Shown here in pieces: positions 30,628 through 64,000 of a stretch of DNA of 64,000 nt. The stretch comes from Fimbriosthenelais zetlandica (Eukaryota), in NCBI GenBank assembly GCA_977030845.1, contig OZ365115.1:8556001-8620000 (forward strand). The letters run 5' to 3'. The position numbers and the translations under genes are program-made. The notes under the pieces were generated by a model. The model was not told where the DNA came from, did no database searches, and saw only the letters and a list, made by a program, of their open reading frames with translations. The first letter of the stretch is position 1; every line of letters begins with the position of its first letter.

Positions 30628-33193
30628 TCATGTTAACTCCATTTTACAATTCGCTGTGGAATTTATCGCAGTTTCAGCAGACTTTGATGGCTGATTATGC
30701 TGCTTTTTCATGTGCCAGTCTAGGGAAGATTTCTGCCTGCATGTATAATCACACAGTTGGCATGCCACTGGTTTCTCATCTCGGTGAATTAGCATGTGAT
30801 TTTTGAGATGAGTTATCCTCTTAAACTCTTTGTTACATCCAGGCCAGGTGCATGGATTGTATTGTACAGGGCCATGAGAACTGCTTTTATGTTTACTCAG
30901 GTTGCCTTTTTTCATACTTTGACCACAAATCTCACAACACACAATGTCTGAATCATGCACGTGATGTATGTGCCTGTTTAACCTAAGCTTATTCTTGAAC
31001 TTTTTATGACACTCAGTACATTCTACTTCAAATTGCCGACCTTCCTCGTGACGGTTGAATTTATGTTCCCTCATCAGTATCAATGTACCAAATGCCATGC
31101 CACAAATCTCACATATCACGTCCTTCTTGGGCTTCTCAGTCCCATGTACTTTGTGCATGTGCTGGAGTTTGGCATAATTATTGCTGAAAAATCGGTGACA
31201 GATCATGCATGTTTTTGCAAGCCGAACTTCACTAGCTGTTGATATGTCAGTCATCAGTGGCTCACCACGCTCATGCAATTTTTCAGAGCTGCCCTCATTC
31301 AGAGAACATTTACCTCCTTCCATTTCCTCATCAACAACATTAGTTAGGCACTGTTCATATATGGCTTTCCATCCAGGATCTTTTCCTGAAAGACTATGCT
31401 TCAGATTTAAGTGCACTCTTAGTTTAGAACGTTGGACCCTTTCACTGCAGATTGTACACCCAACAGTTTTAGCTCCGTGATTTCTGCGCAAGTGATCTGT
31501 CATGTTCTTTAGATTCCTCATATTTTTGTAGCACAATGGACATTTGTAGTCAGCTTCCTCATTGACATGTACATTTTTAATATGTCGCGTGAGGGTAAGA
31601 TTATTTTTTAGGACTTTGTCACAATGGGGGCATTTTATTTCAGTGCCTCCCGTGTGTAAAACTAAAACGTGACGCCTCAAAAGGGGCGCAACGCCAAAGG
31701 AGGCTCCACAGACATCACAGCAGTGATCTTTGGTTGGCTCCTCAGCACCATGCTCTTTATGCATGTGTTGAAGTTTGCTGTATTCATTACCGAATGATCT
31801 TTCACAAACAGTACAAGAGTGAATAGGTTTTCGAGCCCTCTTCAAAGCAGTAGGCCTACCATTTTTGTGATTAGGTTCTGTAGGCGTATAAGACGGAGGT
31901 GACTGAAAATTGAATTCCTTATTTTCTGTTTGGGAACTAGGTTCACCTGAAGGATTTTCAGAGGCATTTTGTACCATTTCCTCGTCAGCTGCAACAACAT
32001 TAGCCAGGCACTGTTCATATATGGCTTTCCATCCAGGATCTTTCCGGTTCATATCATGATTCAATTTCAGATGCACTGTTAGTTCGGAACGTGGAATCCT
32101 TTCATTACAGAGTGTGCAACCAATAGTTTTAACTCCATGGATTTTGCGTATGTGGGCATTTAAGATTAAGTGGTTCCTCATATTCTTGTAACACAAGGGG
32201 CATTTGAGTTCCTCCTCCTGTTGCTTATGTAGCCTCCCAATATGCCGCCTCAGAGATAGATAATTTTTAAGGACTTTATCACAATGTGGGCATTTAACTT
32301 CAGTGTCTTTCTTATGTATTACATATATATGACGTCTTAGACAGGAAGCAGTGCCGAAGGAATTCCCACAGATATCACAGGAGTGATCTTTGGTTGGAGC
32401 CTCAGCACCATGCTTTTTATGCATGTGCTGAAGTTTAGTGTATTTTTCATGGAAGGATCTCCCACATACATTACAAGAGTGCAGTGGTGTCCGAGACTTC
32501 TTCAGACCGACAAGATTTCTGTGAGTATGGCTCATATGCATTCGTAAGGCTTTCCTATTCTTGAAGACATTATTGCAGTGGCGACAATTTATTTCTAAGC
32601 AAGTATTTTTACTTTCAGATTGATCCTTTTCTGCCTCATCCTTCAGCCACTTTGAACACATCCGAAGTCTCATCTCCGTTCGCCCTTCTGATGGTCCTCG
32701 TGCTGAGGTTGGATCTTCATAAGAAGGATCATCACGATCAGAACAATTCGAGCTGCTTCCCTCAGATTCTAAATCATCTAGTTCATCTTTAAATGAACTA
32801 CCGGTGTCATCTTGTGTAAGTACTGAATCCTCATCACAACTATGGCCTTCAGTGATGACTGGGGATATTGCATCAGAGCTGGTATTAATACAGGGCTTCT
32901 CATCATCTATTTCCTTCATATCAGCATCTTCAAAACCAGATTGAAGCTGAACAAGTGAAGAGGTACACTGAGGAAACAACATTGATGCATGACACACAGC
33001 AGCAGCAGGTGAATCTGGGATTGGGTTATGAGCAGGGAATGTATCATGACCTTGCATTGTCAAGTGATGTGTTGGAGAAAGATGCCCATTCTCTCGTTTA
33101 ATGGTGGCCCCAGTGTAATTGATGGTAGTTTCGTCCGCCCTTCTATTCAAATCGTTCGCAGGTCGGGGCACATCAGGCTTCTGGTCAAAATCA
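30628..33193 (-). CDS. U1 C2H2 zinc-finger terminal exon, ~17 fingers (1+5+5+6)
   Basis: Acceptor TTCTCTTTACAG|T GAT TTT GAC CAG at 33193; open to TGA at 30628; length 2566=3n+1; ends CRQKSSLDWHMKKQH. Confidence 0.92.
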
Positions 33194-33804
33194 CTGTAAA
33201 GAGAAGGGGTGAAAATAGTTGGTCAAGGGAGTGTCAATAATTAAAGTGAATGTTTATTTCCGGATACTTGATATCAGGTTCAACATATGTAACATATTTT
33301 CTAAAGAGACCTTTACCTGACACTAAGATTATCTTCACTGGGAAAGAATGCAAAATGTATAGGGTACATACAAATGTATAAGGTAAATGTCTTCTCTGTC
33401 TCCATCGATAGGCACAATATTCACATTCAAGTGGTTGTCAAATAAGGATGTCAATGTGATATTTCTCTTTCAATGTTTTATTAAAGCCACGTAGAACTCA
33501 GAACACAGTATGTTTCATGAACCATTATTGTCATATATATTATACTTAGGCTATAAAAATGTTTTGTAGTTTTAACGTTTTGCCATGCCTTGTTTAGACA
33601 ATTATTTTTGAATCCACAGAAGGTATTCAGTACACATTACTTATTGCATACTTAAAACTAGAACCCAATATAGATGGACCTAATAGTCTAGTAGTCCATT
33701 CAACCAAATGTCCATAGCACGAGTTAGCTTTTATCATTATTACCGGTACGACACCTAAAACTCTACTTTGGAAAAACCATGTTTAATTTTGAATTTATCA
33801 TTGT

Positions 33805-35800
33805 TTATGCTGTGAAATTTGTTACAGTTTCAGCGGCCTTTGATGGCATATTATGCTGCTTTTTCATGTGCCAGTCCAGAGAAGATTTCTGCCTGCAAGT
33901 ATAATCACAGAATTGGCATGCCACTGGTTTCTCATTTCTATGTATTAGCATGTGAGTTTTCAGATGAGATGAGTATTTGAACATTTTGTTACAGCCAGGC
34001 CAAGTACAAGGTCTATATTTTACAGTGCGATGAGCAGAGCTCCTATGGTTACTCAGGTTGCCTTTTCTCACACTCCGTCCACAAATCTCACAACACACCA
34101 TGTCTGAACCATGGGTCCGGGTCAGGTGCTTCTTTACTGCATTCTTGTTCTTGAGTTTTTTATGACACTCAGGACATTCTACTTCATGGCCTTCCTCGTG
34201 ACGGTTGAATTTATGTTCCCTCATCAGTACCACTGTACCAAAAGCCATGCCACAAATCTCACATATCACCTCTTTCTTGGGTTCCTCAGTCCCATGTGTC
34301 TTGTGCATATGCTGGAGTTTGGAATAATTATTGCTGAAATATCTGTGGCAGATCATGCATGTCGTCGCAAGCCGAACTTCACTAGCCGTTGATATGTCAG
34401 TCATCAGTGGCTCACCACGCACATACAATTTTTTATTTTCTGGGTCAGAGCTACCTTCCATTGGAGCATGTTCAGCTGAATGACCTCCCATTTCCTCATC
34501 AGGTTCAACAACATTAGCTAGGCACTGCTCATAGATCTCTTTCCATTTTGGATCCTTTCTACCTGAGAGAACATGGTTCAACCTCAGGTGCACTTTTAGT
34601 TTGGAACGTAGGACCTTTTCACTGCAGAGTGTGCACCCAACTGTTTTAGCTCTGTGAATTTTGACCAGGTGGCCGGTCAGGTTTATGTGACTCCGCATAT
34701 CTTTGTGACAAAAAGGACATTTGAAGTCCCCCTCGTCATTTGTATGAACATTTTTAATATGTCGCTTGAGAGTAAGATAATTTTTTAGGACTTTCTCACA
34801 ATGGGGGCATTTCATTTCAGTGCCTCCCGTGTGTAGAACGAAGACATGACGCTTCAGTTGGGAAGCAACACCAAAGGAGGCTCCACAAACATCACAGCAG
34901 TGATCTTTGGATGGCTCCTCAGCACCATGCTCTCTATGCATGTGTTGTAGCTTAGTGTATTCAGTTTTGAATATTCTTCCACAAACAGTACAAGAGTGAA
35001 TAGGTGTCCTAGACTTCTTCCCACCAGCCACCTTTTTGTGGTTATGTTTCATATGTATTTGTAAGGCTGATTTGCTCTTGAAGACTTTACTGCAGTGGCG
35101 GCAATGTATTTCTAATCTGTGATCCTTATGACTTGTACGTAAATGACTTTTAAGTTCTGAAAGACCATCAAAAGATGTTCCACAAATTCTACAGGAGTGA
35201 TTTTGTGATATTTCATTTTCAGATGGGACATTTTTAGCCCGGACCTTCCCCTTCATTGAGCGCATCCTACTTCCTTTCTTCGTTCGTCTTTGGGATTGTC
35301 TTCGTCTGGCACCAAGACCTGAAGTTACACCTTCTTTAGAAGGATCGTCATGATCTGAAGAGCTTGTGAAACTACTTTGGAATTTCAAATGACCTATTTC
35401 ATCATTAAATGAACTTCGATCATCTTGTATTGTCTCTTCATCAAAACCTTGGCCGTCACTGTGGACAGAGGATACTGCATCAGAGCTAGCATTAGTTCCA
35501 GGTGTCTCTTCTTCTGCTTCCTTCATGCCAGCATGTTCAGAACCTTTGAGAAACTGACGTGCAACAAGTGAAGAGGTACACTGAGAAAACATCATTGATG
35601 CAGGACGACTTCCAGCCGCTGAATCTGGCCCTCGTGGGTTTGCTCCATGAGGGAAGAATGTATGATCCGGCGACACATCCGGTGACACATCCTCTTCTTT
35701 CACAGTAATGCCAGAGTTCTTAATGACATTGACAGTTTCCTCCTCACTTCTAGCCACGACAGTCGCTGGCGGGACAACTTTATTCTTCTGGTCAAAATCA
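33805..35800 (-). CDS. U2 C2H2 zinc-finger terminal exon, ~13 fingers
   Basis: Acceptor CTCGCCCTCTTTTTACAG|T GAT TTT GAC at 35800; 1996=3n+1; AATAAA on the minus strand at 33477-33482. Confidence 0.92.
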
Positions 35801-35959: not shown

Positions 35960-36055
35960 TAAATGGTCAAATTTATGTTTCCATTTGAATGTTTTATTAC
36001 AGCCAAGCCAACGGTCTGCGACTAATACATTGTCTCTTCTTATATCACTGAGATA
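35960..36055 (-). pseudogene. Decayed relic of the penultimate finger of a U11/U12-like exon
   Basis: Translates RWLGCNKTFKWKHKFDHL versus U12 PWPNCHKTFRRKLHLENHL; no acceptor or remaining body. Confidence 0.6.
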
Positions 36056-37482: not shown

Positions 37483-39955
37483 CTACATGTATGTATCATT
37501 GTTCAAAGTTTCAGCGGCCTTTGGCGGTAGATTATGCTGTTTTTTCATGTGCCAGTCCAGGGAAGATTTCTGCCTGCATGTATAGTCACAGAGTTGGCAG
37601 GCCACTGGTTTCTCATCTGTGTGTGTTAGCATGTGAAGTTTGAGATGAGATGAGGATTTGGAAACTTTGTTACAACCAGGCCAAGTACAAGGTCTGTACT
37701 TTACTGGGCCATGAGAAGCGGCTCTATGTTTACTCAGGTAGCCCTTTCTCACACTCCGTCCACAAATCTCACAGCACACCATTTCTGAGCCATGCTTCTC
37801 AACCAAGTGCCTGTTTAACCTTATCTTATTCTTGAGCTTTTTATGACACTCGGGACATTCTAATGCTTGGTGTTCCTCATGTCTGTTGACTTTATGTTCC
37901 CTCATCAATATCGCAGTACCAAAAGCCATTCCACAAATGTCACATATCACCTCTTTCTTGGGCTTCTCTGTCCCATGTATTTTGTGCATGTGCTGGAGTT
38001 TGGCATATTTATTATTGAAAAATCGGTGGCAGATCATGCATGTTTTTGCAAGTCTAAGTTCACTAGCTGTTGATACGTCAGTCTTCATTGGCCCACCACG
38101 CACATACAATTCTTTATTCTGTTGTTGAGAAGTTCCTTCTTTTGGAGCCCGTTCATCTCGATCTTCTCCAATTTCCTCATCACGTTCAACAACATTAATT
38201 AGGCATTGTTCATATATGGCTTTCCATCCAGGGTCTTTCCTTCCTGAAAGACCATGGTTCAGCTTCAGATGCACTGTTAATTTGGAACGTGGAACCTTTT
38301 CACTACAGAGTGTGCAACACACAGTTTTGACTCCATGCATACTGTTAAGGTGGGATGTCAAGCTTAAGTGGTTCTTCATCTTCTTGTAACATAAGGGACA
38401 TTTGAGCTCACCCTCTTCCTCCTCCACATGTACATGTTTAATATGTCGCCTAAGTGTAAGGTGATTTTTGAGAACTTTATCACAATGTGGGCAATTTACC
38501 TCATTGCCGGCCTTGTGTACAACATAGACATGACGCCTAAGATTGACAGCAGTGCCAAAGGAAGATCCACAGATATCACAGCAATGATCTCTGGATGGCT
38601 CCTCAGTACCATGCTCTTTATGCATGTGTTGAAGCTTAGTGTATTCATTATTGAAAGATCGCCCACAAATATTGCAATTGTGTAGAGGGGACTGAGACTT
38701 GTTAAATCCTGTCACATTCCTCGGAATAAGTTCTGTATTTGATTTATGTGATTGAGATTCTGAATCCTTATTCTCTGGTTGAGAACTCCCTTCACTTGGC
38801 ACCAGTTTGGCAGAATTTTCTCCCATATTCTCATGATGTTCAACAACATTACTTAGGCTCTGTTCATATACGTCATTCCATCCAGGATCCTTCTTGCCTG
38901 AAAGACCATGGTTCAACTTGAGATGCATTGCTAATATTGAAACTGGAATCCATTCACTGCAAAGTGTGCATCCCACCGTTTTAACTCTGTGACTTTGGCG
39001 CATGTGGTCTGTTAACTCTGTATCGTTCCTCATATTCCTGTAACACAAGGGACATTTGGGCTCTTTCTCTGCCTTTTGGACATGGACACGTTTAATATGG
39101 CCTGCCAGAGTGAGACGATTTTTGAGGGTTTTCTCACAGTGGGGACATTTAACTTCAGTCCCTGTATTATGTAGTACATACACATGGCGCCTGAGAGTGG
39201 ACGCAATGCCAAAGGAGGCACCACAGATATCACAGCAGTGATCTTTGGTAGGCTCCTCCCCACCATGTTCTTTATGCATGTGTTGAAGTTTACAGTAATT
39301 GTTATTGAACAGTCTCCCACATACATCACAAGAGTGCACAGTTTTCTGAGACTTCTTCAAATCTGCATTACTGTGTTTTTCTCTTATATGCCTTTGTAGG
39401 GCTGATTTTGCCTTGAAGTTTTTATTGCAGCGGAGACAATTAATTTTTCGATCCTTCTGGAGCCTTGAAAACATTCGAATCCCCAGCGTTCTTCGCCCGC
39501 CTGGAAATTCAGCATCAGGAGCAGAGTTTGCACCTTCATAAGGGGGATCTTCAGGGTCTGAGAAATTGGAGCTGCTCGCCTCAGATTTCAAATCTAGTTC
39601 ATCTTTAAATGATCTATCATCCTGTGTAAGTACTGACTCCTCATCAAAATCTTGGCCCACATTTCTGGCCGAGGGAATTGTAAGACAAGGCTTCTCATCT
39701 TCTGTATCGTTTATGTTAGCATCTTCTAAACCTTTGAGAGATTGAGATGGAACAAGTGAAGATGTACACTGAGCTAACATCATTGATGCATGACGCGCTG
39801 CAGCAGCTGCATCTGGTCCACGTGGGATTGGGTTATGAGCAGGGAATGTATGATCCGGCAATGTCAAGTGATGTGGTGGGAAAATGACAGTTTCCTCCTC
39901 CCTTCTATTCACGACAGTCACAGGTCGGGGAACTTTATTCCTCTGGCCAAAATCA
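37483..39955 (-). CDS. U3 C2H2 zinc-finger terminal exon, ~17 fingers (1+5+5+6)
   Basis: Consensus acceptor at 39955; 2473=3n+1; AATAAA on the minus strand at 37362-37367. Confidence 0.92.
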
Positions 39956-40154
39956 CTGTAAAAAGAGGGCGAGAGAAGAAACTGTCACTGAGTGTTTAAA
40001 TGATTGTAGCAAAGGTGTTTTTGGATGCTTGATATCAGATTCATTTATAATTTGACTAAAGGCTACGTGATACAACACATCAATGTTGTTCCCCATATGC
40101 AAGATGCCAATGAACATATTATCTCTGAGAGCAAAGGAAAAACATAAATCTAAA

Positions 40155-41029: not shown

Positions 41030-43046
41030 TTACAAAGGGAAATTTGTCCCAGTTTCAGAAGTCGATGGCCGAGAATGGCGCTTTTTCATGTGCAAGTTCA
41101 ATTTCGTCTTCTGTCTGCATCTATAATCACAGATTTGGCAAGCCACTGGTTTCTCATTTTTATGTGCTAACATGTGAATTCTTAAATGAGATGCTATTTT
41201 GAAAACTTTGTTACAACCAGGCCAAGTGCAAGGTTTGTATTGTATAGGGCGATGAGCAGAGCTCTTATGGCCACTCAAGTAAATTTGTTTAACACAGAGG
41301 CCGCAAATTTCACAACACACCATGTCTGAACAATGCATACGGCGCAAGTGCCGCGTTAAACATTTCTTATCCCGGACCTTTTTCTGACACTCAGGACATT
41401 CTAGTTCTAATCCCCGACCTACACCATGGCAGTTGTACTTATGTTCATTCACATTTCTAATGGTGCCAAAAGCCTTGCCACAAATCTCACATATAACCTC
41501 TTTCTTAGGCTCCTCAGTCCCATGTTCTTTGTGCATGTGCTGGAGTTTGTTATATTCAGAGTTAAAACGTCTGTGACAGATTATGCATGTTTTTGCAAGT
41601 ACATTTTTCTGAGATCTTGATTCCCCTGAATTTCCAGTTTTAACTCTACATTGCTTCTTTGGCCTATCACCTGGATTAGATTCCCCTGAATTTACAACCA
41701 GTTCATCTTTACCAAGAAAGTTAATTAGGCTCTTTTCATATGTCTCTTTCCATACACGATCTTTCTCATCTGAAAGACGATGCTTCAAAGACAGATGGTA
41801 TTTAAGTTTGGAACGATGAATCCTTTCATTACAGAGTGTGCAACAGATAGTTTTAACTCCGTGAACAGATCCCATATGATTTGTCAAACAATAACGGTTT
41901 ATCATGTCCTTTGAACACACGGGACATTTAACACCCTCCTCCTGGAGATGTACACGTTTAATATGACTTGAGAGACACTGAAAGTCTTTCTCACAATGAG
42001 GGCATTTCTTTACATTGTGTGCACTATCAACATGACGCTTGAGTAAGTTGTTAGTGCCAAAGCGGGCCCCACATTTATCACAGCAGTAATCTTTGGATGG
42101 TTCCTCAGCACCATGCTGTTTATGCATGTGCTGAAGTTTACCGTATTCAGTACGGTAATATATCCCACACACATCACATTTGTTAGATGAAGTACTTTGT
42201 GGCGTTTTCAAATCAATCTCATCGTTGTGCATAAGCATGAGATGGCTTTGAACAGCGTCCATGGTCTCGAACATTGTACTGCAAGAGAAACATTGATATA
42301 TGATGGGGTCCATATCAGGACAGTAGTTCTCATCTCCTCTTTCCTTCATGTCAGCATCTTCATAAGCATTCAGAGACTGAGATGAGAAGGTACCCGGAGA
42401 AAGCACACTTGATGCAGGAGCGGTTCCAACAGCTGAATCTGGTTCAAGTTTGTCTGAGTATGAATGATCTGTTATCATCAACTGATGCGGTGGATTAATA
42501 AGTGTGGAGTGTGGAGTTGCAGCTTCTTCCTGTATTCTATTTACTACAGTCAAAGGTAGGCGATCAACAGGATCCTCTGAGTCTGACTCATGTGGGTTTG
42601 GTTCATGTTTGTTGAATGTCTGATCATCTGGTATAGTCAGTAAAACGATAGTTTCTTCCTCCGCTCCCTTCACTATGGTCAAAGGTACGGGAATAACATT
42701 TTCAGAACCATTCAGAGACTGAGATGAAACAAGTGAAAAGTTACCCGGAGAAACTATGCTTGATGCAGGACCAGTTCCATCAGCTGAATCTGGTTCAAGT
42801 GAGTTTGAGTATGAATGATCTGATATCATCAACTGATGTGGTGGAGCAATGAGTGTGGAATGTGGAGATGGAGCTTCTTCCTGTATTCTATTCACTGCGG
42901 CTGAAGGTCCAGGAAGAACATCCTCTGAGTCTGGCTCATGTGGCTTTGGTTTATGCTTGAGGAATGTCTGACCATCTGACTTTGCCGGTAAAACGACAGT
43001 TTCTTCCTCCCTTCTATTCAAGTAGGGTCCAGGCAGGGGGACATCA
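41030..43046 (-). CDS. U4 C2H2 zinc-finger terminal exon, ~12 fingers, duplicated N-terminal segment
   Basis: Acceptor TCGTCGTCTTTTTACAG|T GAT GTC at 43046; 2017=3n+1; near-copy of U5. Confidence 0.9.
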
Positions 43047-43395
43047 CTGTAAAAAGACGACGAGAGAGGAAACAGGGTTCACTTCCAAACTATCAATGTT
43101 TATAAACGGAAATTTATGTACAGAGGTCATTTCTGATCAAGTAATCTTTCATACAAGTACAAGAATCAGCACATCAGCACATGATCATAAAGGAAAAGGG
43201 ACATGGACATGTTAGACCATAGAAGTGTAGGGTTAGACTGATGAAAACTCATAAGCGATACAATATCGCAACCCCCTCCCCCAATCATAACATATTTTTA
43301 GAACTATTAGGGTACTCCTCAAGAAAACAGAAAAAAAACAAACATAGTTAAATTTATAACTAACAATGTCAATGTTTATAATGGAAAATTAACGT

Positions 43396-51737: not shown

Positions 51738-53712
51738 CTAGACGTCACTGTTGTCATTTACTGACGTTTCATCAGCCTTTGATGGCGCATTATGCTGTTT
51801 TTTCATGTGCCAGTCCAGGGATGGTTTCTGCCTGCATCTATAATCACAGAGTTTGCATGCTACTGGTTTCTCATCTGTGTGTATTAGCATGTGCTTTTTG
51901 AAATTAGATAAGTGATTGAATTGTTTGTTACAACCAGGCCAAGTGCAAGGTTTGTACTCTACAGGGCGATGACACCTTATATGGGTAGTGAGGTATCCTT
52001 TTCTCACACTCCGTCCACAAATCTCACAACATACCATGTCTGAACCATGCATCAGGCCAACGTGTCGTCCAAGTGCCACCTTGTTCTTGAACATTTTATG
52101 ACACTCCGGGCATTCAAATTCACGAGATTCCTGATGAGAGAATAATTTGTGTTCTCTGACCAATATCAAAGTACCAAAAGCCTTCCCACAAATCTCACAT
52201 ATCACCTCCTTCTTGGGCTTCTCAGTTCCATGTACTTTGTGCATGTGCTGTAGTTTGGAATAATTATTGGGGAAATATCTGTGACAGATCATGCATGTTG
52301 TTGCTAGACGAGCTTCACTAGCAGTTGATATGTCAGTCTTCAACGGCCCACCACGCACATACACTTTTTTATCATTTGATTGAGAACTTCCTTCGCTTGG
52401 AGCCTGTTCACCTGAACTTCCCACCATTTCCTCAGGATGTTCAACATTATTTACGCACTCTTCATATACTGCTCTCCATCCAGGATCATTTTTCCTACGG
52501 GAAAGACCATGTTTCCTTACCAAATGCATTGTTAATTTGGAACGTGTTATCTTTTCATTACAGAGAGTGCAAACTACAGTTTTAACACCATGAATACTGC
52601 CAAGGTGCGCTGTTAAGCAGGAGTGATTCCTCATATCCTTGTAACACAATGGACATTTGAGCTCCTTTGTCTCATGCACATGTACAAGTTCAATATGCGT
52701 CTTGAGAGTCATATCATTTTTGAACACTTTTTCACAGTGGGAACATTTGACTCTAGACACTGCACTGTGTTTTATAGACATATGACTCCTTAGAGAGTAA
52801 ATAGTACCAAAGGAAGCTCCACACACTTGACAGCAATGATCTTTGGATGGCTCCTCAGTACCATGTTCTTTATGCATATGCTGAAGTTTAGAGTATTCAT
52901 GATTAAAAGCTCTTTCACAAACTGTACAAGAGTACTTCTTCAAAGCAACTACATTTTTGTGCTGAGATCTGTTATGCTTTCGTAAAGCTGACTTGGTTTT
53001 GAAGACTTCATTGCAGTGGACACAATTAATTTGTATGTTGTAGTCCTTGTGATCTGTAAGCAAATGAGTTTCAAGTTCTGAACCTAACTCAAATGAAATC
53101 CCGCAATACTTACAGGTGTGACCTTGAGCCAAGTGCTTAAGTTTGTTATGGCTTTTTGGAAACTTTTTAAAAGGAACAATTTCAGCCTTCTCATGTAGCT
53201 GCTTTGAACACTCCTTCCTCCCCATCTGTGTTCGCCTTTGTGATTTTCTTCGCTTAGCTACAGGAGCTGAGTTGTAATCTTTGTATGATGCATCTTTATG
53301 ATGTGAAGAATTTGTATGATGTGAAGAATTTGTGAAGCGATCCTCAAATTTCAAATCACATAGTTCATCTGTAAATGAACTTTGATCATTCTGTGTTGGT
53401 ACTGTCTTCTTCTCAAAACCATGACAGTCACCTTGCACTGAGGAAGTCCTATCATAATTAATATTAATACAGGTTTTCGCGTCTTCTATTTCCTTTGTTT
53501 CAGCATGTTCATACCCTTTGACAGACTGAGATGGAACCAGTGAAAAGGTACACATCCTTGATGCATCACAAGTTGCATCAGCTAGATCTCGTTGTGTATT
53601 TGCTGTATGATCTGGCATTGTCAAGTGATGCGATGGAGAAATGACAGTTTCCTCCTCCCTTCTATTTATGACCGTCCCAGGTAGGAGAGCTTTATCCTTC
53701 TGGTCAAAATCA
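51738..53712 (-). CDS. U8 C2H2 zinc-finger terminal exon, ~13 fingers
   Basis: Acceptor CAGTGACAGTTTCTCTCCCCCTTTTTTACAG|T GAT TTT at 53712; 1975=3n+1. Confidence 0.92.
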
Positions 53713-54370
53713 CTGTAAAAAAGGGGGAGAGAAACTGTCACTGATCGAGTGTAAAAACCTTGACAGTAAAATATCCATTTTAATAGTAGTCCGTAGAGCT
53801 CACAAGTAACTAAGTTTGTTTCATAAATTGTTGATATGTTTATGTAAAATCCAATTAGAGTTTTCATAGACAGGGATCATTTTACATCATGACCAGATCC
53901 ATGTATGTTCATTTTGTGCTCGTAAGCATAGGTTCACTAACAAATGACTACAATGAAAGTGATATCCTGTTTATATCCACCAAGATAAGCATGTTTTATA
54001 CTCAAACTGCAGATCTCGCAAAAAAATTAGTTTCGTTTACAAACCATTGTCATATATTTATGTAAAATCCATTTATTTCGCAGAGATTTCATACACAAGG
54101 GACATTTTACATCATGGCGATAGTTATGAATGTTCATTTTGTGTTCGCAGTTCAGTACCAGGAACCACATGCCCACAAGGAACCAACACCCCTGAAATAT
54201 TAATACACACGTCTATATGAAAAACATCTTATACCACTATATATATATAACAACACCTTCATAAGCACTAAATATGCACACAAAATAACCAACAGGCCCT
54301 GTATAATTATGCAATATGGTGGCTTAGCTTCTATTTATATTAGCTTCTATTTATCTAGCACTGTTCATTG

Positions 54371-56159
54371 TTATTGAGGTTTCAGCATTGGCGCCTGATT
54401 ATGTTGTTTTTTCATGTGCCAGTTCAGGGAAGATTTCTGCCTACATGTATAGTCACAGAGTTGGCATGCCACTGGTTTCTCATCTGTGTGTACTAGCATA
54501 TGTTTTTTGAGATGAGATGAGTTAGTGAACACTTTGTTACAGTTAGGCCAAGTGCAAGGACAATATTTTACAGGGCGATGAGCAGAGCTCCTATGCGTAC
54601 TGAGGTTGCCTTTTCTCACACTCCGTCCACAGATCTCACAACACACCATGTCTGAACCATGCATCCGTGAAATGTGCGATCCTAGGGCCTTCTTGTTCTT
54701 GAACTTTTTACCGCACTGAGGACATTTTAATTCCCTGCTTTCCCGATGGGCGTGTACCATATGTTCTCTTACCAAAATCTCGGTACCAAAAGCCTTCCCA
54801 CAAATCTCACATATCACCTCCTTCTTGGGTTTCTCAGCTCCATGTACTTTGTGCATGTGCTGGAGTTTGGAATAATTATTGTTGAAATATCTGTGACAGA
54901 TCATGCATGTTTTTGCAAGACGAGCTTCACTAGCTGTTGATATGTCAGTCATCATTGGCCCACCAGGCACATGCAATTCTTTGATTTCTTCCGAACTTAC
55001 TTCACTTGGATCCAGTTCACCTAAACTTGCTATTTCCTTATCACATTCAGCAACATTAGTTAGGCACTGCTCATATATGGCTTTCCATCCGGAATCTTTC
55101 CAGCATGAAAGACCATGCTTGTCTACCAGATGCAGTGATAATTTGGAACGTGAAATCCTTTCATTACAGAGTGTGCATCCTACAGTTTTAACTCCATGGA
55201 CCTTCTTAAGGTGAGCTGCCAAGTTTATATAGCTCCTTATATTCGTGTAACACAAGGGACATTTGAGCTCTTCCTTCTGCATATGCACGCATTTAATATG
55301 CCGTAAGAGATTAATATCATTTTTGAAGACTTTGCCACAATGTGGACATGTCACTCTAGTCCCAGTCCTGTGTAGTACATACACATGGCGCCTTAGAATG
55401 GAAGCAGTGCCAAAGGAGGCACCACAGATATCACAGCAGTGATCTTTGGATGGCTCCTCCCCACCATGTTCTTTATACATGTGTTGATGTTTAGTATATT
55501 GATGACTGAAATATCTCCCACAAACAGTACAGGAGCGCACAGACTTTTTCAATGTAGCCCAATTTTTGTGCTTACATTTGTTATGCTTTTGTAAGGCTGA
55601 CTTAGTTTTGAAGACTTCATTGCAGTGGAGACAATTAATTAGCACATGGTAGTCCTTATGAACTGTTTCAGATGGCACCAACCCAGCCTGGTCCTTCAGC
55701 TGCTTTGAGCATAACCTACTTCCCGCCTTGGTTCTCCTTTGGGATTTTCTTCGCTTAGCTACAGGAGCTGAAAAACTTGCCTTGCTACCCTCAAATTCCA
55801 AAGCAACTAGCTTATCTTTAAATGGACTTTGATCATCTTGTGTTGGTACTGACTTCTCATCAAACTCTTGCATTGAGGAATTTGTATCATAGGTTTGTGC
55901 TTCTTCTGATTCCTTCACATGAACATGTTCAAACCCTTTTAGAGACTGAGTTGGAACAAGTGAAGAGGTACACTGAGAAAACATCCTTGATGCATTACAA
56001 ATGCCATCAGGTGAGTCTGGTTCATGTGGGATTGGGTCATGAACGAGGATTGTATGATCCAACTTTGGCAAGTGATGTGGTGGAGAAGTGACAGTTTCTT
56101 CCTCCCTTCTATTCATGATGGACACAGTTGGGGGACCTTTATCCTTATGGTCAAAATCA
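54371..56159 (-). CDS. U9 C2H2 zinc-finger terminal exon, ~12 fingers
   Basis: Consensus acceptor at 56159; 1789=3n+1. Confidence 0.92.
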
Positions 56160-56631: not shown

Positions 56632-58465
56632 TTATACTGTGAAATGTGTTTCAGCAGCGTTTGGTGGGAGATTATGCTGCTTCCTCATGTGCCAGTTCAT
56701 GGACGATTTCTGCCTGCATGTATAGTCACAGAACTGGCAGGCCACTGGTTTCTCATCTCTGTGAATCAGCATGTGAGTTTTGAGATGGGAGGTTGTTTTG
56801 AACAATTTGTTACATCCAGGCCAAGTACAAGGTTTGTACTGTACAGGGCGATGAGCAGAGCTCTTATGGTTACTCAGGTTGCCTTTTCTCACACTCCGTC
56901 CACAAATCTCACAACACACCATGTCTGAACCATGGGTCCGGGTCAGGTGCTTCTTTACTGCCTTCTTGTTCTTGAACATTTTATGACACTCAGGACATTC
57001 AAACTCACGAGTTTCCTGATGAGAATTTAACTTATGGTCTCTCACCAGTATTAAGGTACCAAAAGCCATGCCACAAATCTCACATATCACCTCTTTCTTG
57101 GGCTCCTCAGTCCCATGTACTTTGTGCATGTGCTGGAGTTTGGCATAATCATTGTTGAAAAATCTGTGGCAGATCATGCATGTTTTTGCAAGTCGAGCTT
57201 CACTAGCTGTTGATATGTCAGTCATCAGTGGCTCACCACGCACATACAGTTTTTTATTCTCAGAGCTACCTTCACTTGGATCATGTTCAACTGAATCACC
57301 TTCCATTTCGCCATCACGTTCAACAACATTGGCGAGGCACTGGTCATATATCTCTTTCCATGCTGGATCTTTCCCACGTGAAAGAGCATGCTTCCCTATC
57401 AGATGCACTGTTAGTTTGGAACGTGGAATCCTTTCATTACAGAGTGTGCAACCAATAGTTTTAACTCCGTGAATACTGCGGAGATGGGCTGTCAAGTTGA
57501 AGTGGTTCCTCATATCCTTGTAACATAAGGGGCATTTGAGGTCCCCTTCCTCCCCCACATGTACATGTTTAATATGCCGTGTGAGATTGATATCGTTTTT
57601 AAAGATTTTGTCACATTGTGGACATTTAACTTCAGTCCCTGTATTGTGTAGCACATACACATGACGTCTGAGATTGGCAGCTATTCCAAAGGAGGCACCA
57701 CACATATCACAGCAGTGTTCTTTGGTAGGCTCCTCTGCACCATGTTCTTTATGCATGTGCTGTAGTTTACTGTATTTATCATTGAATGATCTTCCACATA
57801 TATTACAAGAACGTCGAGGTGTCCGAGACTTCTTCAGACCAACATAATTTCTGTGTTTACGTCTGTTATGCATTCGTAAAGCTGACTTGGTCTTGAAGAC
57901 TTTATTGCAGTGGAGACAATTGGCCTGATCCTTGTAGTCCTTATGATCTGTATGCAAATGACTTTCTAGCTCCGAAAGTGCATCAAATGATTTTCCACAC
58001 ACCTTACAGGTGTGACGTGGATTAAATTCTTCAATGCCATGGTCTTCTTGCATGTGCTGAAGTTTGCTCTGCTTATTTGTAAACTGTTTCAAACACAAAA
58101 GACATGTGTTTTCATTTTCAGATGGAAACTTTTCTGCCCGGCCCTTGAGCCGCTTTGAGCGCACCTTACTTGCCATCATTGTTTGCCTTTGTGATTTGCC
58201 ACGTCCAGCATCAGGAGGTGGGTTTCTATCTTCATAAGAAGGATCGTCATGATCAGAAGATGTTGTGCAGCTGCCCTCAGATTCCATATCATCTATCTCA
58301 TCTTTAAATGATCTATCATGTGCTAATACTCTGTGGTGCCTGTCATAGCCATGGCCATCAGTGTCGGTCTTTGGGAAAGTGTAAGGTCTGGGTTTCACAC
58401 ATTCTTCTCCCCCTCTTTGCCTCAGTGTCACAGGTAAGGGAACGTGATCCTTCTGGTGAAAAGCA
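56632..58465 (-). CDS. U10 C2H2 zinc-finger terminal exon, ~14 fingers
   Basis: Consensus acceptor at 58465 (T GCT TTT CAC CAG); 1834=3n+1. Confidence 0.92.
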
Positions 58466-58667
58466 CTGTAAAAAGAGGGCGAGAGAAGAAACTGTCACTG
58501 AGTGTGTAAACCATGATAGTAAATGTCCGTTTTTTGGATGCTCGTTATCAGATTTAAAAAGTTGTATATATTGACACAAGGCAATCAAATGGCAATGAAC
58601 ATAATAGTCTCCTAGAGCAATTCAAAGCAAGAATGTCTTTCAAGAAGTATTCTAAATCTAAACAGGC

Positions 58668-60360
58668 CTAATGATGTTGTTTTTTCATGTGCCAATTAAG
58701 GGACGTTTTCTGTCTACATCGATAGTCACAGAGCTGACAAGCAAGTGGTTTGTGATCTGTGTGTACATTTAAGTGGTTTTCAAGGTGATGTTTCCGTCTG
58801 AATCTTTTATGACAGTCAGGCCAAGGGCATGGCATGAAAGTATTACCATGTTTCCTCCTCTTATGTGCAGCAAGATAACCTGGTTTAAAACTCAACCCAC
58901 AGATATCACAACAAACCAGGTTTGTTTCATGAACAAGTGTCATATGTTTCTGTAAAATGAATTTATTTTTAAGTGTTTTCATACACTTGGAACATTGCAC
59001 CTCAAGGCCAGATTCATGCTTGTTCATTTTGTGTTCACGAAGCAGTTGTTTAGTACCAAATGCTGTACCACAAACATCACATATCATCTCCTTTGGAGGC
59101 TTCTCACCACCATGAACTTTGTGCATGTGTTGAAGCTTGGAATAAACGTCCCTGAAATATTTTTTACACACACAACATTTTTTTTCATAAGGGTTCTTCC
59201 ACCTGTGGTAAGAGTCAGAACGTTTTTTCAACCAATCACTTTTGTCAAATACGGGCACACTATTTGGTGAAGCACTCTGGGTTCGATGTGTTGCTAAGAG
59301 ATTTTGTTGGACATCTGCAGACTGCTTTATGGACTGTTCATGAACCTCACTTCTGTCAACTCGAGCTACTGACACACTTGCTGAAGGTCTTTGGCTTGTT
59401 TCTAATTCATCCTCTTCAACATCGGCCAACTGCTTTAAGGACTGATCATAAACCTCTTTCCACAAGGGCTTGTTGGATCGGGAGAGTTTATGGGCTCTTA
59501 GAAGGTGTTCAGTGAGATATGAACCCTTCTTGGTACAGCCACAAATGGCGCAGATAACAAGCTGGCTATAATGAACCCTAGCCATGTGATAACGAAGGTT
59601 CACCTTGTTCCTCATATTTTTATTACAAATTGTACACATCTCATCTTCTGGCTTGCCTTGATGCATTTGAACAATGTGTTTACGCAAGTTAAGGTTATTC
59701 TTGTAGGTTTTACCACAGTGAGGGCAATCGACCTCAGTAGCCTCATGAATTGTTAGGTTATGGCGCTTCAATGAAGACATGTTAGCAAACTGTTTCACAC
59801 ATAGATTACACCAGAACTGCCTGTCAGGATCAGGTCCACCATGTTTATGATGCATATGTCGATCCCTGCCACGTTTTGATCTAAATCTTTTGCCACATTC
59901 TTCACATGTGCGCCTGTTCCTAGCTTTCCCTGGCCTTTTAACACTTTGTTTTCTTTGCAACACAGACTCAGGTGACCCACGAATACACGCATCGTTTTCA
60001 GAACCTTCCACATCACCAAGTATTTCTAAACTATCGGATGTTTCCAACATCATCTGCCCTTTTACTACAATGCTCTTTTCTTTGTCCTTTGATGTTCCTG
60101 CATTATTCTCAGTACAGATTGTATCAGAACTATTTTCTTGCTCATCTAATTTTTCTGTATCATATAAATCTTCATCTTCATCACCCGTTTCTAGCTTTAT
60201 GTCAAGGTAAGAAGGTGTCCTTATGATTTTCGAATCAGATGAAGGCATATTCTGCTCATGCTTGTCACCATGGAAGGATTGAGGCTGGTGGTTTTGCTCT
60301 TGCCCAGTTATATCCTTCCCCACCAGTGACTCTCTTCCTCTCTCCGACCAATCACATCCA
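58668..60360 (-). CDS. U11 C2H2 zinc-finger terminal exon, 11 fingers (divergent subgroup)
   Basis: Acceptor CAGTGACAATCTCTTCTCTCTTTACAG|T GGA TGT at 60360; 1693=3n+1. Confidence 0.92.
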
Positions 60361-60380
60361 CTGTAAAGAGAGAAGAGATT

Positions 60381-60433: not shown

Positions 60434-60919
60434 CTGAGGCATGAGCAAAGCCTCAGCAACTTTCCTTCCTGGAATATCATCGTCAAATGCAGACCAACTG
60501 TCCAGCCTCAGTGAGCTGCCACACTTTATATCAAATACCTATGCATTTGGAATTTTGATAGGTTTATTACAATGACGAGTTCAATAAATAAGACCAGAGC
60601 TTTACTGACCTATATAATTTTCCTTAAATCTAAAGCTTACAATTGTTCCAGTACAAAGTTACTCCCAGACAACAATAACATTCTTTTAAACCTAAATATC
60701 ACATCAGTAAGGCGAAAATTGACCTCTTTCACAACAGAAGCAACGGTGATAGACGGTTCAAAAGTTACAAAAAAATGGAAGTTTCCCAATTCATATGCAT
60801 TATAATAAAGCCCTCTTAGGCCCTATAGAAACCATCACTCAAGGTTCTGTCTTCAATACTAATGAACATAAGTCTACAAGAGCAATTCAAAGCAAGATTA
60901 GAGAACATCTTTTAACAAA

Positions 60920-62723
60920 TTATTCTGAAGCTAAAAGGGCAAAGGGATGGTGTTTATTAATGTGGCAATTAAGGGACGATTTCTGTCTACATCGATAGAC
61001 ACAATGTGGACAGGTGTGTGGTTTGTGATCTCTGTGTACGTTTAAATGGTTTTCAAGGTGTAGTTTCCGTCTGAATGTTTTATGACAGTTAGGCCAAGGG
61101 CATGGCATGAAAGTATTACCATGTTTCCTCTTCTTATGTGCAGCAAGATAACCTGGTTTAAAACTCATCCCACAGATATCACAACAAACCAGGTTTGTTT
61201 CATGAACAATTGTCATATGTTTCTGCAAGGTAACCTTATTTTTCAGTGTTTTCATACACTGAGGGCATTGCACCTCAAGGCCAGTTTCATGCACATACAT
61301 TTTGTGTTCACGAAGCAGTAGATCAGTACCAAATGCTGTACCACAAATATCACATATCATTTCCTTGACAGGCTTCTCTCCACCATGAACTTTGTGCATG
61401 TGTTGAAGCTTGGAATAAAGATCCTTAAAAATTCTATTACACACAGGACATACTTTGTTCTCAAGGGTTCTTGGTCTGTGATGAGTTACTGAATCTCTTG
61501 CCACATTACTGTCAACGACTGACACTGTATCTGCTGAAACATTTTGATTTGTTTCTTGCAGATTTTGTTGGACATCTGCAGACTGCTTTATGGACTGGTC
61601 ATGAACCTCACTTGCATCAACTACTGACACACTCACTGATGTACTTTGGCTGGTTGCTGGCAGATTTTTTTCAACATAAGCAGACTTTATGGACTGCTTA
61701 TAAACCTCTTTCCACAAGGGGTCTTTCCGAAAGAGTTTATGGACCCTCTGAATGTGTTCCCTGAGATATGTACGATTCCTTGTACAGCCACAAATGGCAC
61801 AGACAACAATCTGTTTTTTATGAACACAAGAAATGTGATTCGAAAGCTGCACCTTGGTTGTCATATGCTTATTACACATTGTACACTTCAATTCTTCTGC
61901 ATTGCCTTGATGCATTTCAACAATATGTTTACGCAAGTTAAACTTAGTCTTAAATGTTTTTCCACACTTGGGGCATTTCTGTTCAGTACCCTCTTCATGA
62001 ATATTTCTTATATGACACTTTAATGTAGCCATGCTAACAAACTGTTTTTCACATGTATCACACCAATATTCTTTCACGGGATTAGGGCCACCATGTTTCT
62101 GGTGAACATGCATGTCCTTAGCACGTTTTGAGCCAAATCTTCTGCCACATTCCTCACATCTTCTCAATGTCCAGCCCCTTTTCCTGCCTTTCTTTGGTCT
62201 TTTAACACCTTGTTTTCTCTTTGATAGAGACTCAGCTGACGCACCAATACTAGTACAGTTTTTAAAATCCTTAATTTCTGAAACTTCCTCATCACCATGT
62301 ATTTCTAAACCATCTGATTTTCCCAAATTCAACTGCTCTTCATCTTCAAGGCCCTCAACGCTCTTTTGTTTTTCCCTTGATGTACCTGCCTGATCCTCAA
62401 TATCTAAAATAGGAGAATCAAAATGGGACTGAAGAAGCTTCTGATCTGCATCAATGATTGGTTTCGATTCCGGTGAATCACTGTTTGAGCACATGTCAGT
62501 CACTTGATGCTCATCATATATTACTGTATCATATGAATCATCATCATCAGTTTCTGGCTTTATGTTAATATAAATATGTTTCCTTAAGCTTTTCAATTCA
62601 GACGAAGCCATATTCTGCTCCTGCTTGTCACCATGATCGGATTGATGCTGATGGTTTTGCTCTTGCCCAGTTATATCCTTTCCCACAAGTGATTCTCTTC
62701 TTCTCTCCGACCCATCACATCCA
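60920..62723 (-). CDS. U12 C2H2 zinc-finger terminal exon, 11 fingers (paralog of U11)
   Basis: Acceptor CAGTGACAATCTCTTCTCTTTTTACAG|T GGA TGT at 62723; 1804=3n+1. Confidence 0.92.
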
Positions 62724-63060
62724 CTGTAAAAAGAGAAGAGATTGTCACTGGTGGGACAGTCACAGGCTGAGGTATGAGCAAAGCCTCAGCAACTTTCCTT
62801 CCTGGAAGTAATCAAATGAAGACCCTCTCTTGGGCCTCAATAAGTGGGCTGCCATACCTTATACCATTAATCAATACCTTTATGTATTTTTAAATTTTGA
62901 GAAGTTGAATATTGTGTCACGTTCAATTAATAAGACCAAAAGCCTTGTAAATTCTAAAACTGACCTAAGTAATCTTGCTTACAGTTTTCTAGAACATTCT
63001 TTCAAACCTAAATGTCACATCACTCAGTGTGTCATATTTGGAATTAAACTACTACTAAAG

Positions 63061-63112: not shown

Positions 63113-63146
63113 CTGTCAAGAGACTGGCGGGACAGTGACATAACAT

Positions 63147-63258: not shown

Positions 63259-63784
63259 CATAACATGTTTGTATATTACTGTACATCACAGAGGGAGCCA
63301 CTGAGCGAGGGAGCCACTGAGCTCTCCAGATACCCCATTAAAAGTAGAAGAGTAGCTCCCAAGAAACTAAGCCGGCGTCATGTGTTCTGTACTCTATCCC
63401 ATCTACCCATCAGTTCCATATCAGTTTATGATAAGATGCTGGAAAACACCAAATGAAGATCTTATGTTCAGCCATAGTGAGCTGTCATACCTTGGACCTA
63501 TATTGAAAATGTCATGCTTCCAGAGGATGAAAAATTCAATGAATGACAACTCTAAGGATTCCAAAATTGACCTAACTAATTTTATTAGTTTGAAGCTTAC
63601 ATTACATAGTAACAATACTAAGTAATTTCTAGCCAACAAAGATTTCTTTCAAACATAAGTAACCAAAAAATATATCCAAATATGTAATACACACCAGCTT
63701 TGCCACTTCAAGCAAAGTTCAGGCTCAATCAAATTAAGAAAATAGTTCTCATCTTCTCAACTTCCTAGGCCCCCTACTTTCTTT

Positions 63785-64000
63785 TTATCCTAACGAACCC
63801 CCCTCACATTTTGGGCCAGTCTTATCATATCCAGGATGGTGTTTTTTCATGTGCCAGTTCATGGCAGCTCGCTGTCTACATCTATAATCACAAAGCTCAC
63901 ATCCAAGAGGTTTCTCATCATTATGTATACGCATGTGGACCTTCAGACCATCACTCCGCTGAAAAGTCTTACTACACCCGTCAAAGGGACAATGTATTCG
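63785..64000 (-). CDS. U13, 3' end of a further zinc-finger unit (partial; absent from the ORF track)
   Basis: Manual translation: RIHCPFDGCSKTFQRSDGLKVHMRIHNDEKPLGCELCDYRCRQRAAMNWHMKKHHPGYDKTGPKCEGGSLG*, matching the last two fingers of the other units. Confidence 0.88.
   Translation of the reverse strand, partial: RIHCPFDGCSKTFQRSDGLKVHMRIHNDEKPLGCELCDYRCRQRAAMNWHMKKHHPGYDKTGPKCEGGSLG

What the first reader, a model, noticed from the sequence alone, without database searches (positions are those of the whole stretch)
30628..64000. Array of 13 or more same-phase alternative zinc-finger terminal exons: a candidate lola/mod(mdg4)-like one-gene, many-DNA-binding-domains locus
Seen: 12 of 12 complete ORFs begin at a conserved acceptor, all have length 3n+1 (phase 2), and all end in a stop. 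The frame is open from the acceptor. In most units the first in-frame ATG lies about 35-75 codons later, yet the intervening peptide is conserved (DFDQK..NRREEETV), and indels there are multiples of 3 (18 nt in U4/U5, about 30 nt in U11/U12). Spacers are only 202, 349 and 472 bp in three cases, and I found no conserved donor or first exon. Known: Drosophila lola, broad, fruitless (C2H2) and mod(mdg4) (FLYWCH) join a constant BTB region to alternative 3' finger exons, partly by trans-splicing. Inference: a shared upstream coding exon beyond 64000 is spliced to one variable exon per mRNA, giving a repertoire of transcription factors. I know of no description of this with 11-17-finger exons in this family.
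Basis: partly seen in the sequence, partly recalled or inferred. Interest (0 to 1): 0.93.

Follow-up and report, generated by a model that had tools for sequence, protein, structure and literature searches.

The report
Array of promoterless zinc-finger terminal exons
At least 13 tandem zinc-finger coding blocks each start at the same conserved splice acceptor, lack a conserved start codon and sit too close together to be ordinary genes, so they are most likely alternative last exons of one transcription-factor gene, though no RNA data could be found to prove it.

Summary
Twelve complete minus-strand units and a thirteenth cut by the window end each begin at a conserved branch-point, pyrimidine-tract and ACAG|TG acceptor. 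Each is 3n+1 nt long, encodes 11-17 C2H2 fingers and ends in a stop.

Between the acceptor and the first in-frame ATG, the ORF frame has 0 stops in all 12 units. The other two frames have 50 and 19. The units are old paralogues (dS 0.4 to saturated) under purifying selection.

Spacers are unalignable except for the last 40-100 nt before each acceptor and an AATAAA-bearing block. No conserved 5' exon exists. The 202-nt spacer before U10 holds no possible ATG...GT exon in the right phase.

One claim is weaker than stated. The "conserved peptide" after the acceptor shows no codon-position asymmetry, so it is conserved as nucleotides, not as protein.

The best reading (about 0.6) is that upstream coding exon(s) beyond position 64000 are joined to one unit per mRNA, as in lola. 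This is unproven. The constant exon lies outside the window, no sequencing run was listed, no orthologue exists in public proteins, and the organism is an unidentified invertebrate. No BTB domain was seen.

The scan's own note on U4's spacer agrees.

The parts
30628..33193 (-). U1, the last unit of the array: 854 codons, 17 C2H2 fingers, acceptor at 33193, stop at 30628-30630
33805..35800 (-). U2: 664 codons, 13 fingers
37483..39955 (-). U3: 823 codons, 17 fingers; sister of U1 in the tree
41030..43046 (-). U4: 671 codons, 11 fingers; recent duplicate of U5 (dS 0.065)
43396..45364 (-). U5: 655 codons, 11 fingers
46499..48350 (-). U6: 616 codons, 12 fingers; Met at codon 15
49051..51094 (-). 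U7: 680 codons, 12 fingers; Met at codon 15
51738..53712 (-). U8: 657 codons, 13 fingers
54371..56159 (-). U9: 595 codons, 12 fingers; used as the search query
56632..58465 (-). U10: 610 codons, 14 fingers; diverged from all other units and under purifying selection (dN/dS 0.33-0.55), only 202 nt downstream of U11's stop
58668..60360 (-). U11: 563 codons, 11 fingers; second subfamily, dS saturated against U1-U10
60920..62723 (-). U12: 600 codons, 11 fingers; second subfamily
63785..64000 (-). U13, C-terminal end only (last two fingers and stop 63785-63787); a third, more divergent type; the array continues beyond the window
58466..58667 (-). Spacer S10 (202 nt) between U11's stop and U10's acceptor. 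Its last ~90 nt are the conserved intron end. It contains no ATG followed by 3n+2 nt and GT
43047..43395 (-). Spacer S4 (349 nt): U5's 3' flank, homologous to U4's 3' flank, fused directly to the pyrimidine tract of U4
   Evidence: scan note s1-228895
39956..40055 (-). Example of the conserved intron 3' end, upstream of U3: an element at -100 to -45, then branch-like CAGTGAC, pyrimidine tract and ACAG. Across nine lineages mean identity is 0.71 at -40..-1, 0.43 at -100..-41 and about 0.26 beyond
35975..36011 (-). Conserved spacer block carrying AATAAA, 165-270 nt upstream of the next acceptor; probably the poly(A) signal of the upstream unit. Homologous blocks lie at 33449-33488, 40236-40272 (hexamer mutated) and 48517-48598 (mutated)
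53778..54203 (-). Decayed zinc-finger remnants with stops inside spacer S8 (two partial copies); a similar relic lies at 48641-48832 in S6

Best explanation
The region is a tandem array of at least 13 paralogous coding exons on the minus strand. Each exon encodes a fast-evolving acidic linker followed by 11-17 C2H2 fingers, then a stop. Each is preceded by a selected 3' splice site (branch-like CAGTGAC, pyrimidine tract, ACAG|TG) in one phase: the first exon base completes a codon. Because the frame is open from the first exon base and no start codon is conserved, each unit must be joined to an upstream coding exon. Because the spacers hold no conserved exon, and at least two are too small to hold one, that exon is most likely shared and lies upstream, beyond position 64000. 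One unit would then be chosen per mRNA, by alternative 3' terminal exon choice in cis or by trans-splicing, and the transcript would be polyadenylated in the spacer that follows. The product would be a repertoire of factors with one N-terminal part and different finger arrays. Shown here: the acceptors, phase, open frame, selection on the units, absence of a 5' exon in the spacers, and diversification at DNA-contact residues. Inferred: that a shared exon exists, what it encodes, and how units are chosen.
For: (1) Acceptor and phase are retained in 12 of 12 units although dS between units is 0.4-0.9 and saturated for U11/U12 against the rest. Identity upstream of the acceptor falls from 0.71 (-40..-1) to 0.43 (-100..-41) to about 0.26 beyond, while synonymous sites differ at 30-50%. 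The intron end is therefore under selection.
(2) There are 0 in-frame stops between acceptor and first ATG in all 12 units, against 50 and 19 in the other frames. The U4/U5 length difference there is 18 nt.
(3) The only Met near the conserved N-terminus (codon 15 in U6, U7 and U9) is GTG, TTG, ATA or AGG in the other lineages. That is, it was lost repeatedly, as expected of an internal residue and not of a start codon.
(4) All units keep 560-855-codon ORFs with dN/dS 0.2-0.7 overall and pN/pS about 0.3-0.45 in the finger blocks, so they are expressed and selected.
(5) Spacers share only the intron end, an AATAAA block and the 3' flanks of recent duplicates. S10 (202 nt) has zero phase-compatible ATG...GT candidates, S4 has none with a decent donor, and the few candidates elsewhere are not conserved.
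(6) There are no conserved in-phase donors inside units, so units are terminal and not chained.
(7) DNA-contact positions -1, 2, 3 and 6 are more variable than the other finger positions (entropy 1.3 against 0.84, p=1.6e-4; the comparison set still includes the invariant zinc ligands, which inflates the contrast).
Against: No constant exon, donor or junction has been seen; it would lie outside the window. No RNA or DNA run was listed. No public protein joins an N-terminal domain to a unit-like finger block. Canonical AATAAA/ATTAAA is absent from 6 of 11 spacers, so 3'-end formation after each unit is not demonstrated. The first 23 codons show no protein-level constraint. The N-terminal region evolves at pN/pS about 0.7-1, so translation of that stretch rests on the open frame alone. 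Three units (U6, U7, U9) do have an ATG 43 nt after the acceptor, which also fits an ordinary gene with a non-coding first exon.
Confidence: 0.6

Rival explanations
1. An ordinary tandem cluster of independent zinc-finger genes. Each would have its own promoter and a small first exon (coding or non-coding) in or near its spacer. Units without the codon-15 ATG would start translation at a downstream or near-cognate codon.
For: This is the usual organisation of lineage-specific C2H2 expansions (general knowledge). U6, U7 and U9 have an ATG 43 nt after the acceptor, as in genes with a 5'UTR intron. A block with TATA-like or AATAAA sequence and a second block recur in 4-5 spacers. S1 has one phase-compatible ATG...CAG|GTAAAG candidate.
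Against: No exon-like block is conserved among spacers. S10 has no possible coding first exon, and S4 is only a 3' flank fused to the pyrimidine tract. The ATG is lost in most lineages while the roughly 250 codons between it and the next ATG carry no stop or frameshift. The candidates occur at chance frequency and at different positions.
Confidence: 0.2
2. A polycistronic transcript resolved by spliced-leader trans-splicing. Each acceptor would receive a short leader and each unit would be a separate cistron.
For: Short same-strand spacers, each with a strong acceptor and no visible promoter, look like operon anatomy. The organism is an unidentified invertebrate, so spliced-leader trans-splicing cannot be excluded. 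Another scan note (s1-188408) reports a 'promoterless' tandem copy elsewhere in this genome; that note was not checked here.
Against: A leader does not explain a frame kept open from the acceptor with no conserved AUG in the unit. An ATG formed across the junction (A|TG) would fall in a frame that has stops in most units. No SL RNA or other Rfam family was found in the window.
Confidence: 0.07
3. One giant gene in which the units are consecutive exons, each stop being bypassed from an internal donor to the next acceptor. This would resemble the 2000-5800-aa poly-finger proteins that were the best database hits.
For: All acceptors share one phase. The best exhaustive-search hits are very long multi-block finger proteins.
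Against: No conserved in-phase GT donor exists in any unit; only two weak, non-homologous sites were found, in U8 and U12. The C-terminal tails up to the stop are conserved among units. The long database proteins are only generically similar (30-40% identity).
Confidence: 0.03

Closest known systems
Drosophila longitudinals lacking (lola)
   Same: A tandem array of many alternative 3' terminal exons on one strand, each with its own acceptor, C2H2 fingers and stop, and all compatible with one upstream donor phase. This gives a repertoire of DNA-binding specificities from one locus (established knowledge; mentioned in PMC4667647 and PMC6191721).
   Different: lola exons encode about two fingers (or none), whereas these encode 11-17 fingers plus a 150-250-aa linker. 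lola's constant part is a TTK-type BTB, a type described as arthropod-specific (PMC11426971). Here the constant part is unseen, and the organism is an unidentified invertebrate whose CYP2-like neighbour gene is closest to fish CYP2 among the named hits, which were limited to fragment-length entries. No transcript evidence exists here.
Drosophila mod(mdg4)
   Same: Common 5' exons are joined to one of more than 30 alternative 3' exons. According to PMC13490949 the variable exons have independent promoters and are joined only by trans-splicing, driven by motifs in the last common intron. That model needs no first exon or donor in the spacers, as seen here.
   Different: The variable exons of mod(mdg4) encode FLYWCH fingers, not C2H2 arrays. 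Some lie on the opposite strand, whereas all 13 units here are on one strand. Spacers of 202 and 349 nt leave little room for a promoter.
3' variable regions selected by docking/selector RNA pairing (Drosophila PGRP-LC, Pip; PMC6191721)
   Same: There is a conserved intronic element just upstream of each alternative 3' cassette. Here it lies at -100 to -45 in six of nine lineages and could act as a selector.
   Different: No complementary docking sequence is present in the window. Pairing could not be tested because the putative constant intron lies outside the window.
Tandem KRAB-, ZAD- or FiNZ-type zinc-finger gene clusters
   Same: A lineage-specific, rapidly duplicating poly-C2H2 family with birth-and-death evolution (relics in spacers) and variable contact residues. 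The fingers are in one large last exon.
   Different: In those clusters each copy carries its own promoter and 5' exons with the effector domain. Here no such exons accompany the copies, and Pfam finds nothing but fingers in the units.

Membership tests
lola/mod(mdg4)-type locus (constant 5' exons plus array of alternative 3' DNA-binding exons) | Tandem variable exons, each with its own 3' splice site and its own stop codon, all in one phase | tested here: met
   12 complete units plus one partial; lengths 3n+1; conserved ACAG|TG acceptors
lola/mod(mdg4)-type locus (constant 5' exons plus array of alternative 3' DNA-binding exons) | Variable exons cannot stand alone: no own start codon or first exon | tested here: met
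   Frame open from the acceptor with 0 stops against 50 and 19 in the other frames; Met not conserved; no conserved 5' exon; S10 has no candidate. Three units do carry an ATG at codon 15.
lola/mod(mdg4)-type locus (constant 5' exons plus array of alternative 3' DNA-binding exons) | A shared upstream donor in the matching phase, on constant coding exons | not testable with these tools
   It would lie beyond position 64000. No neighbouring-window notes exist and no related contig carries the family.
lola/mod(mdg4)-type locus (constant 5' exons plus array of alternative 3' DNA-binding exons) | Constant region encodes a BTB/POZ domain | not testable with these tools
   There is no BTB in the window. 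ORFs in 11000-30600 look non-coding by eye and were not scanned against Pfam; Pfam finds only finger families in the units.
lola/mod(mdg4)-type locus (constant 5' exons plus array of alternative 3' DNA-binding exons) | mRNAs joining the constant part to one variable exon | not testable with these tools
   No RNA or DNA run was listed, so read laying could not be used.
lola/mod(mdg4)-type locus (constant 5' exons plus array of alternative 3' DNA-binding exons) | A poly(A) site after each variable exon | tested here: inconclusive
   AATAAA/ATTAAA is present in 5 of 11 internal spacers and in S12; only variant hexamers occur in the others. A conserved AATAAA block is seen in four spacers.
Independent tandem poly-zinc-finger genes (KRAB/ZAD/FiNZ-like organisation) | Each copy duplicated together with its own promoter and 5' exon(s) | tested here: not met
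   All-against-all spacer BLAST finds only the intron end, the AATAAA block and recent 3' flanks. There is no conserved ATG...GT exon.
Spliced-leader trans-spliced operon | Downstream cistrons start with an acceptor followed by their own 5'UTR and AUG | tested here: not met
   The open frame starts at the acceptor, and the AUG position is variable or lost.
Spliced-leader trans-spliced operon | The organism has SL RNA genes and SL-bearing mRNAs | not testable with these tools
   The organism is unidentified, no reads are available, and there is no Rfam hit in the window.
C2H2 zinc-finger proteins (Pfam PF00096 / PF13894) | Repeated C-X2-4-C-X12-H-X3-5-H motifs recognised by the family models | tested here: met
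   E-values from 1e-31 to 3e-21 for three units; 11-17 motifs per unit.

The most novel reading that the evidence does not exclude
A single gene in a non-model, possibly non-arthropod invertebrate joins one constant N-terminal region to any of 13 or more alternative terminal exons. Each exon encodes a complete 11-17-finger DNA-binding array, so this would be an independently evolved, much larger-scale counterpart of lola. The finger family has no recognisable relatives in public protein data. The conserved -100..-45 intronic element could be a selector for exon choice or for trans-splicing.
Probability: 0.45. Interest if true: 0.8.

Novelty: new variant of a known kind. Interest (0 to 1): 0.62.

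Why it matters
If one promoter and one N-terminal module really feed 13 or more interchangeable poly-finger exons, this locus would show that the lola/mod(mdg4) way of building a transcription-factor repertoire also evolved with long C2H2 arrays in a finger family that has no recognisable relatives in public protein data. Whether the host lies outside the insects is not settled, because the organism could not be identified. It would offer a second system for studying how one of many competing 3' splice sites is chosen. It would also warn annotators that such arrays are not single-exon genes or pseudogenes. If the units instead turn out to be separate genes, this is simply a young lineage-specific zinc-finger cluster with unusual 5' ends.

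Tried and rejected
(1) RNA evidence. Two run searches, one on 9.8 kb (RNA only) and one on a single unit (any kind), listed nothing, so read laying was never usable.

(2) Orthologues with an N-terminal domain. The word-indexed search and the exhaustive HMMER search gave only generic poly-finger proteins at 22-40% identity. These came from killifish, lungfish, frogs, insects, a snail and amphioxus, so the family has no annotated relatives.

(3) Taxon. The CYP2-like neighbour gene's closest relatives are unnamed ENA metagenome contigs at 73-79%. An atlas search gave no useful taxon.

(4) Synteny walk. Five loci (L001-L005), about 44 kb beyond the CYP gene on ENA contig ERZ26222911:ctg1020734, contain no finger units, only a satellite.

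(5) Exact-pattern scan of metagenome contigs for the acceptor motif: 0 matches.

(6) A docking-site complement of the conserved intronic element in the window: none.

(7) Rfam families, including SL RNAs: none.

(8) Chaining of units through internal donors: rejected.

(9) The block with GGCTGT-AATAAA as a coding first exon: rejected. The ORF is either in the wrong phase (phase 0) or stopped, and it is better read as a poly(A) signal (and my own reading of the sequence).

(10) The 709-aa ATG-initiated ORF of U8 that reads through the acceptor: rejected as a general solution. Its upstream part is a decayed finger relic and is not conserved in other units.

(11) Neighbouring-window notes: none.

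Full report
WHAT IS THERE

On the minus strand, from 30628 to the right end of the window, lie 12 complete long ORFs and the C-terminal end of a thirteenth. Nothing of comparable length is on the plus strand.

Every unit is preceded by a near-identical 3' splice-site region: a branch-like CAGTGAC, a 20-30-nt pyrimidine tract, and (T)TTTACAG followed by TG. A strict version of this pattern matches eight units, with none expected in shuffled sequence. The other four units are recognisable variants.

From the claimed acceptor to the stop, every unit is 3n+1 nt long. Pfam sees only C2H2-type finger families in the units, and a motif count gives 11-17 fingers per unit.

The units share one architecture:
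- an acidic, Ser/Pro-rich linker of 150-250 residues;
- one or two copies of a five-finger module followed by a conserved KDPGWK..YEQCL motif;
- a six-finger C-terminal module.

IS IT MORE THAN INHERITANCE BY DUPLICATION?

The shared acceptor and phase are expected for tandem copies, so 12 of 12 is not 12 independent observations. What matters is that they persist.

Synonymous divergence between units is 0.4-0.9, and it is saturated between U11/U12 and the rest. Only U4/U5 (0.065) and U6/U7 (0.28) are young pairs. A tree gives three clades: U11-U12, U4-U5, and a star-like burst of the other eight.

Spacers are essentially unalignable. Mean pairwise identity among nine lineages is 0.71 in the last 40 nt before the acceptor, 0.43 at -100..-41, and about 0.26 (random) further upstream. 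The intron end is therefore under purifying selection.

All units keep 560-855-codon ORFs. dN/dS is 0.2-0.7 overall, and pN/pS is about 0.3-0.45 in the finger blocks. They are therefore functional coding sequence, not dead copies.

IS THE STRETCH BETWEEN ACCEPTOR AND FIRST ATG TRANSLATED?

The first in-frame Met is at codon 15 in U6, U7 and U9, at codon 32 in U8, and at codons 38-73 in the others.

In that stretch the ORF frame has no stop in any of the 12 units. The other two frames carry 50 and 19 stops. U4/U5 differ from the others there by 18 nt (sequences).

The codon-15 ATG is replaced by GTG, TTG, ATA or AGG in the other lineages. Every replacement is one step from ATG. On a star-like tree this means repeated independent loss, which is the behaviour of an internal residue in a fast-evolving linker and not of an initiation codon.

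In the first 23 codons the mismatch rate by codon position is 0.29/0.30/0.22, and pN/pS is about 1. The conservation is at the nucleotide level and forms one continuous block with the acceptor (roughly -100 to +60), perhaps splicing signals. Only U11/U12 show protein-level constraint there (ratio 0.28). The case for translation rests on the open frame.

IS THERE A 5' EXON PER UNIT?

All-against-all BLAST of the spacers finds only three things:
(a) the intron end;
(b) a block present in four spacers, 165-270 nt upstream of the next acceptor, that carries AATAAA in two copies and mutated hexamers in two;
(c) 3' flanks shared by recent duplicates.

Block (b) is in the wrong phase or stopped as a coding exon. 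It is best read as the poly(A) signal of the upstream unit.

I enumerated every ATG followed by an open 3n+2 nt and GT. This gives zero candidates in the 202-nt spacer before U10. It gives none with a reasonable donor in the 349-nt spacer before U4. Elsewhere it gives only a few non-conserved, chance-level candidates.

U10 is the key case. It is an old, selected unit with no room for a coding first exon between itself and U11. The scan's own note s1-228895 makes the same point for U4, and I confirm it: S4 is U5's 3' flank fused to the pyrimidine tract.

Units are not chained to each other, because no conserved in-phase donor exists within them and the C-terminal tails are conserved up to the stops.

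WHAT IT MOST LIKELY IS

The simplest model that fits all of this has three parts. Coding exon(s) further upstream, beyond position 64000, are shared by the units. One unit is joined to them per mRNA. The transcript ends in the following spacer. This is the anatomy of lola.

If the units also have promoters of their own in the longer spacers, the anatomy would be that of mod(mdg4). There, variable exons are transcribed separately and joined only by trans-splicing (PMC13490949).

The conserved element at -100..-45, present in six of nine lineages, is placed like the selector sequences of 3' variable regions such as PGRP-LC (PMC6191721). No complementary docking sequence is in the window.

Finger positions -1, 2, 3 and 6 are more variable than the other positions (entropy 1.3 against 0.84, p=1.6e-4). 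That comparison set still includes the invariant zinc ligands, which inflates the contrast. Some fingers are nearly invariant. The units therefore probably differ in DNA specificity while sharing a common core.

WHAT COULD NOT BE SHOWN

- The constant exon, its donor and its domain are outside the window.
- No sequencing run was listed for this DNA, so there is no junction, cap or poly(A) evidence.
- Canonical poly(A) hexamers are missing from six of eleven internal spacers. This is compatible with weak proximal sites in a read-through locus but does not prove it.
- No public protein resembles these units beyond generic finger similarity, so no orthologue tells us what the N-terminus is.
- The organism could not be named. 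The neighbouring CYP2-like gene (exons 8813-11079, plus strand) has its closest relatives on unnamed ENA metagenome contigs.
- A 44-kb walk along the syntenic ENA contig found no finger units. The array is either lineage-specific or not syntenic there.
- Because the taxon is unknown, spliced-leader trans-splicing cannot be excluded on taxonomic grounds. It does not explain an open frame from the acceptor, however, and an ATG created across the junction would be in a stop-containing frame.

VERDICT

I put about 0.6 on shared upstream coding exons, 0.2 on independent genes with undetected 5' exons or unusual initiation, 0.07 on spliced-leader operons, and 0.03 on a chained giant gene.
- Nothing supports or contradicts a BTB constant region.
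- If true, this is a new variant of a known kind of locus, notable for the size of the variable exons and for a finger family with no known relatives.
- The decisive data are the sequence upstream of the array and any long-read cDNA.

Noticed in passing
window 8813-11079 (+): A compact CYP2-like cytochrome P450 gene, convergent with the finger array. Exons lie at 8813-9355, 9661-9861, 10015-10179 and 10903-11079. It is 70-87% identical at the protein level to an unnamed 766-kb ENA metagenome contig (ERZ26222911:ctg1020734). The best named hits are fish CYP2K/2J at about 40%, among fragment-length entries only.
   Followed up: partly
window 53778-54203 and 48641-48832 (-): Decayed zinc-finger coding remnants with stops inside two spacers. 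They are most similar (42-50%) to fingers 2-4 of the C-terminal module of U11/U12. The ATG-initiated extension of the U8 ORF upstream of its acceptor is part of such a relic. This is evidence of birth-and-death turnover in the array.
   Followed up: partly
window 16983-17065 and 18258-18340: Two blocks of about 85 nt, 81-83% identical to the syntenic ENA contig. They are better conserved than the CYP exons (70-75%) and lie in a locally GC-richer stretch. There is no Rfam match and no obvious ORF. They could be small conserved exons or a regulatory or RNA element.
   Followed up: no
window 30182-30381: A 27-nt inverted repeat (96% complementary, 146 nt between arms) in the 3' flank of U1, MITE-like. 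The first AATAAA after U1's stop is 854 nt downstream.
   Followed up: no
window 35801-37482: The longest spacer (1682 nt) carries what look, by eye, like two imperfect copies of a GC-richer element of about 200 nt, probably a transposable-element insertion that inflated this spacer. The repeat finder did not report them.
   Followed up: no
window 60361-60440 and 62724-62790 (-): Upstream of U11 the branch-like motif CCAGTGAC is repeated three times, with a CCTGTGAC variant just before it. U12 has one of each. Multiple candidate branch points precede a shorter pyrimidine tract.
   Followed up: no
window 318-422 and 883-1012: An (AATG)n microsatellite of 26 copies, and a 130-nt run of N (left untouched).
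   Followed up: no
L004:12738-14792 (ENA contig ERZ26222911:ctg1020734): A satellite of about 2 kb with a 33-nt period in the related species. It was called as two overlapping ORFs of 373 and 323 aa on opposite strands and is not a gene.
   Followed up: no
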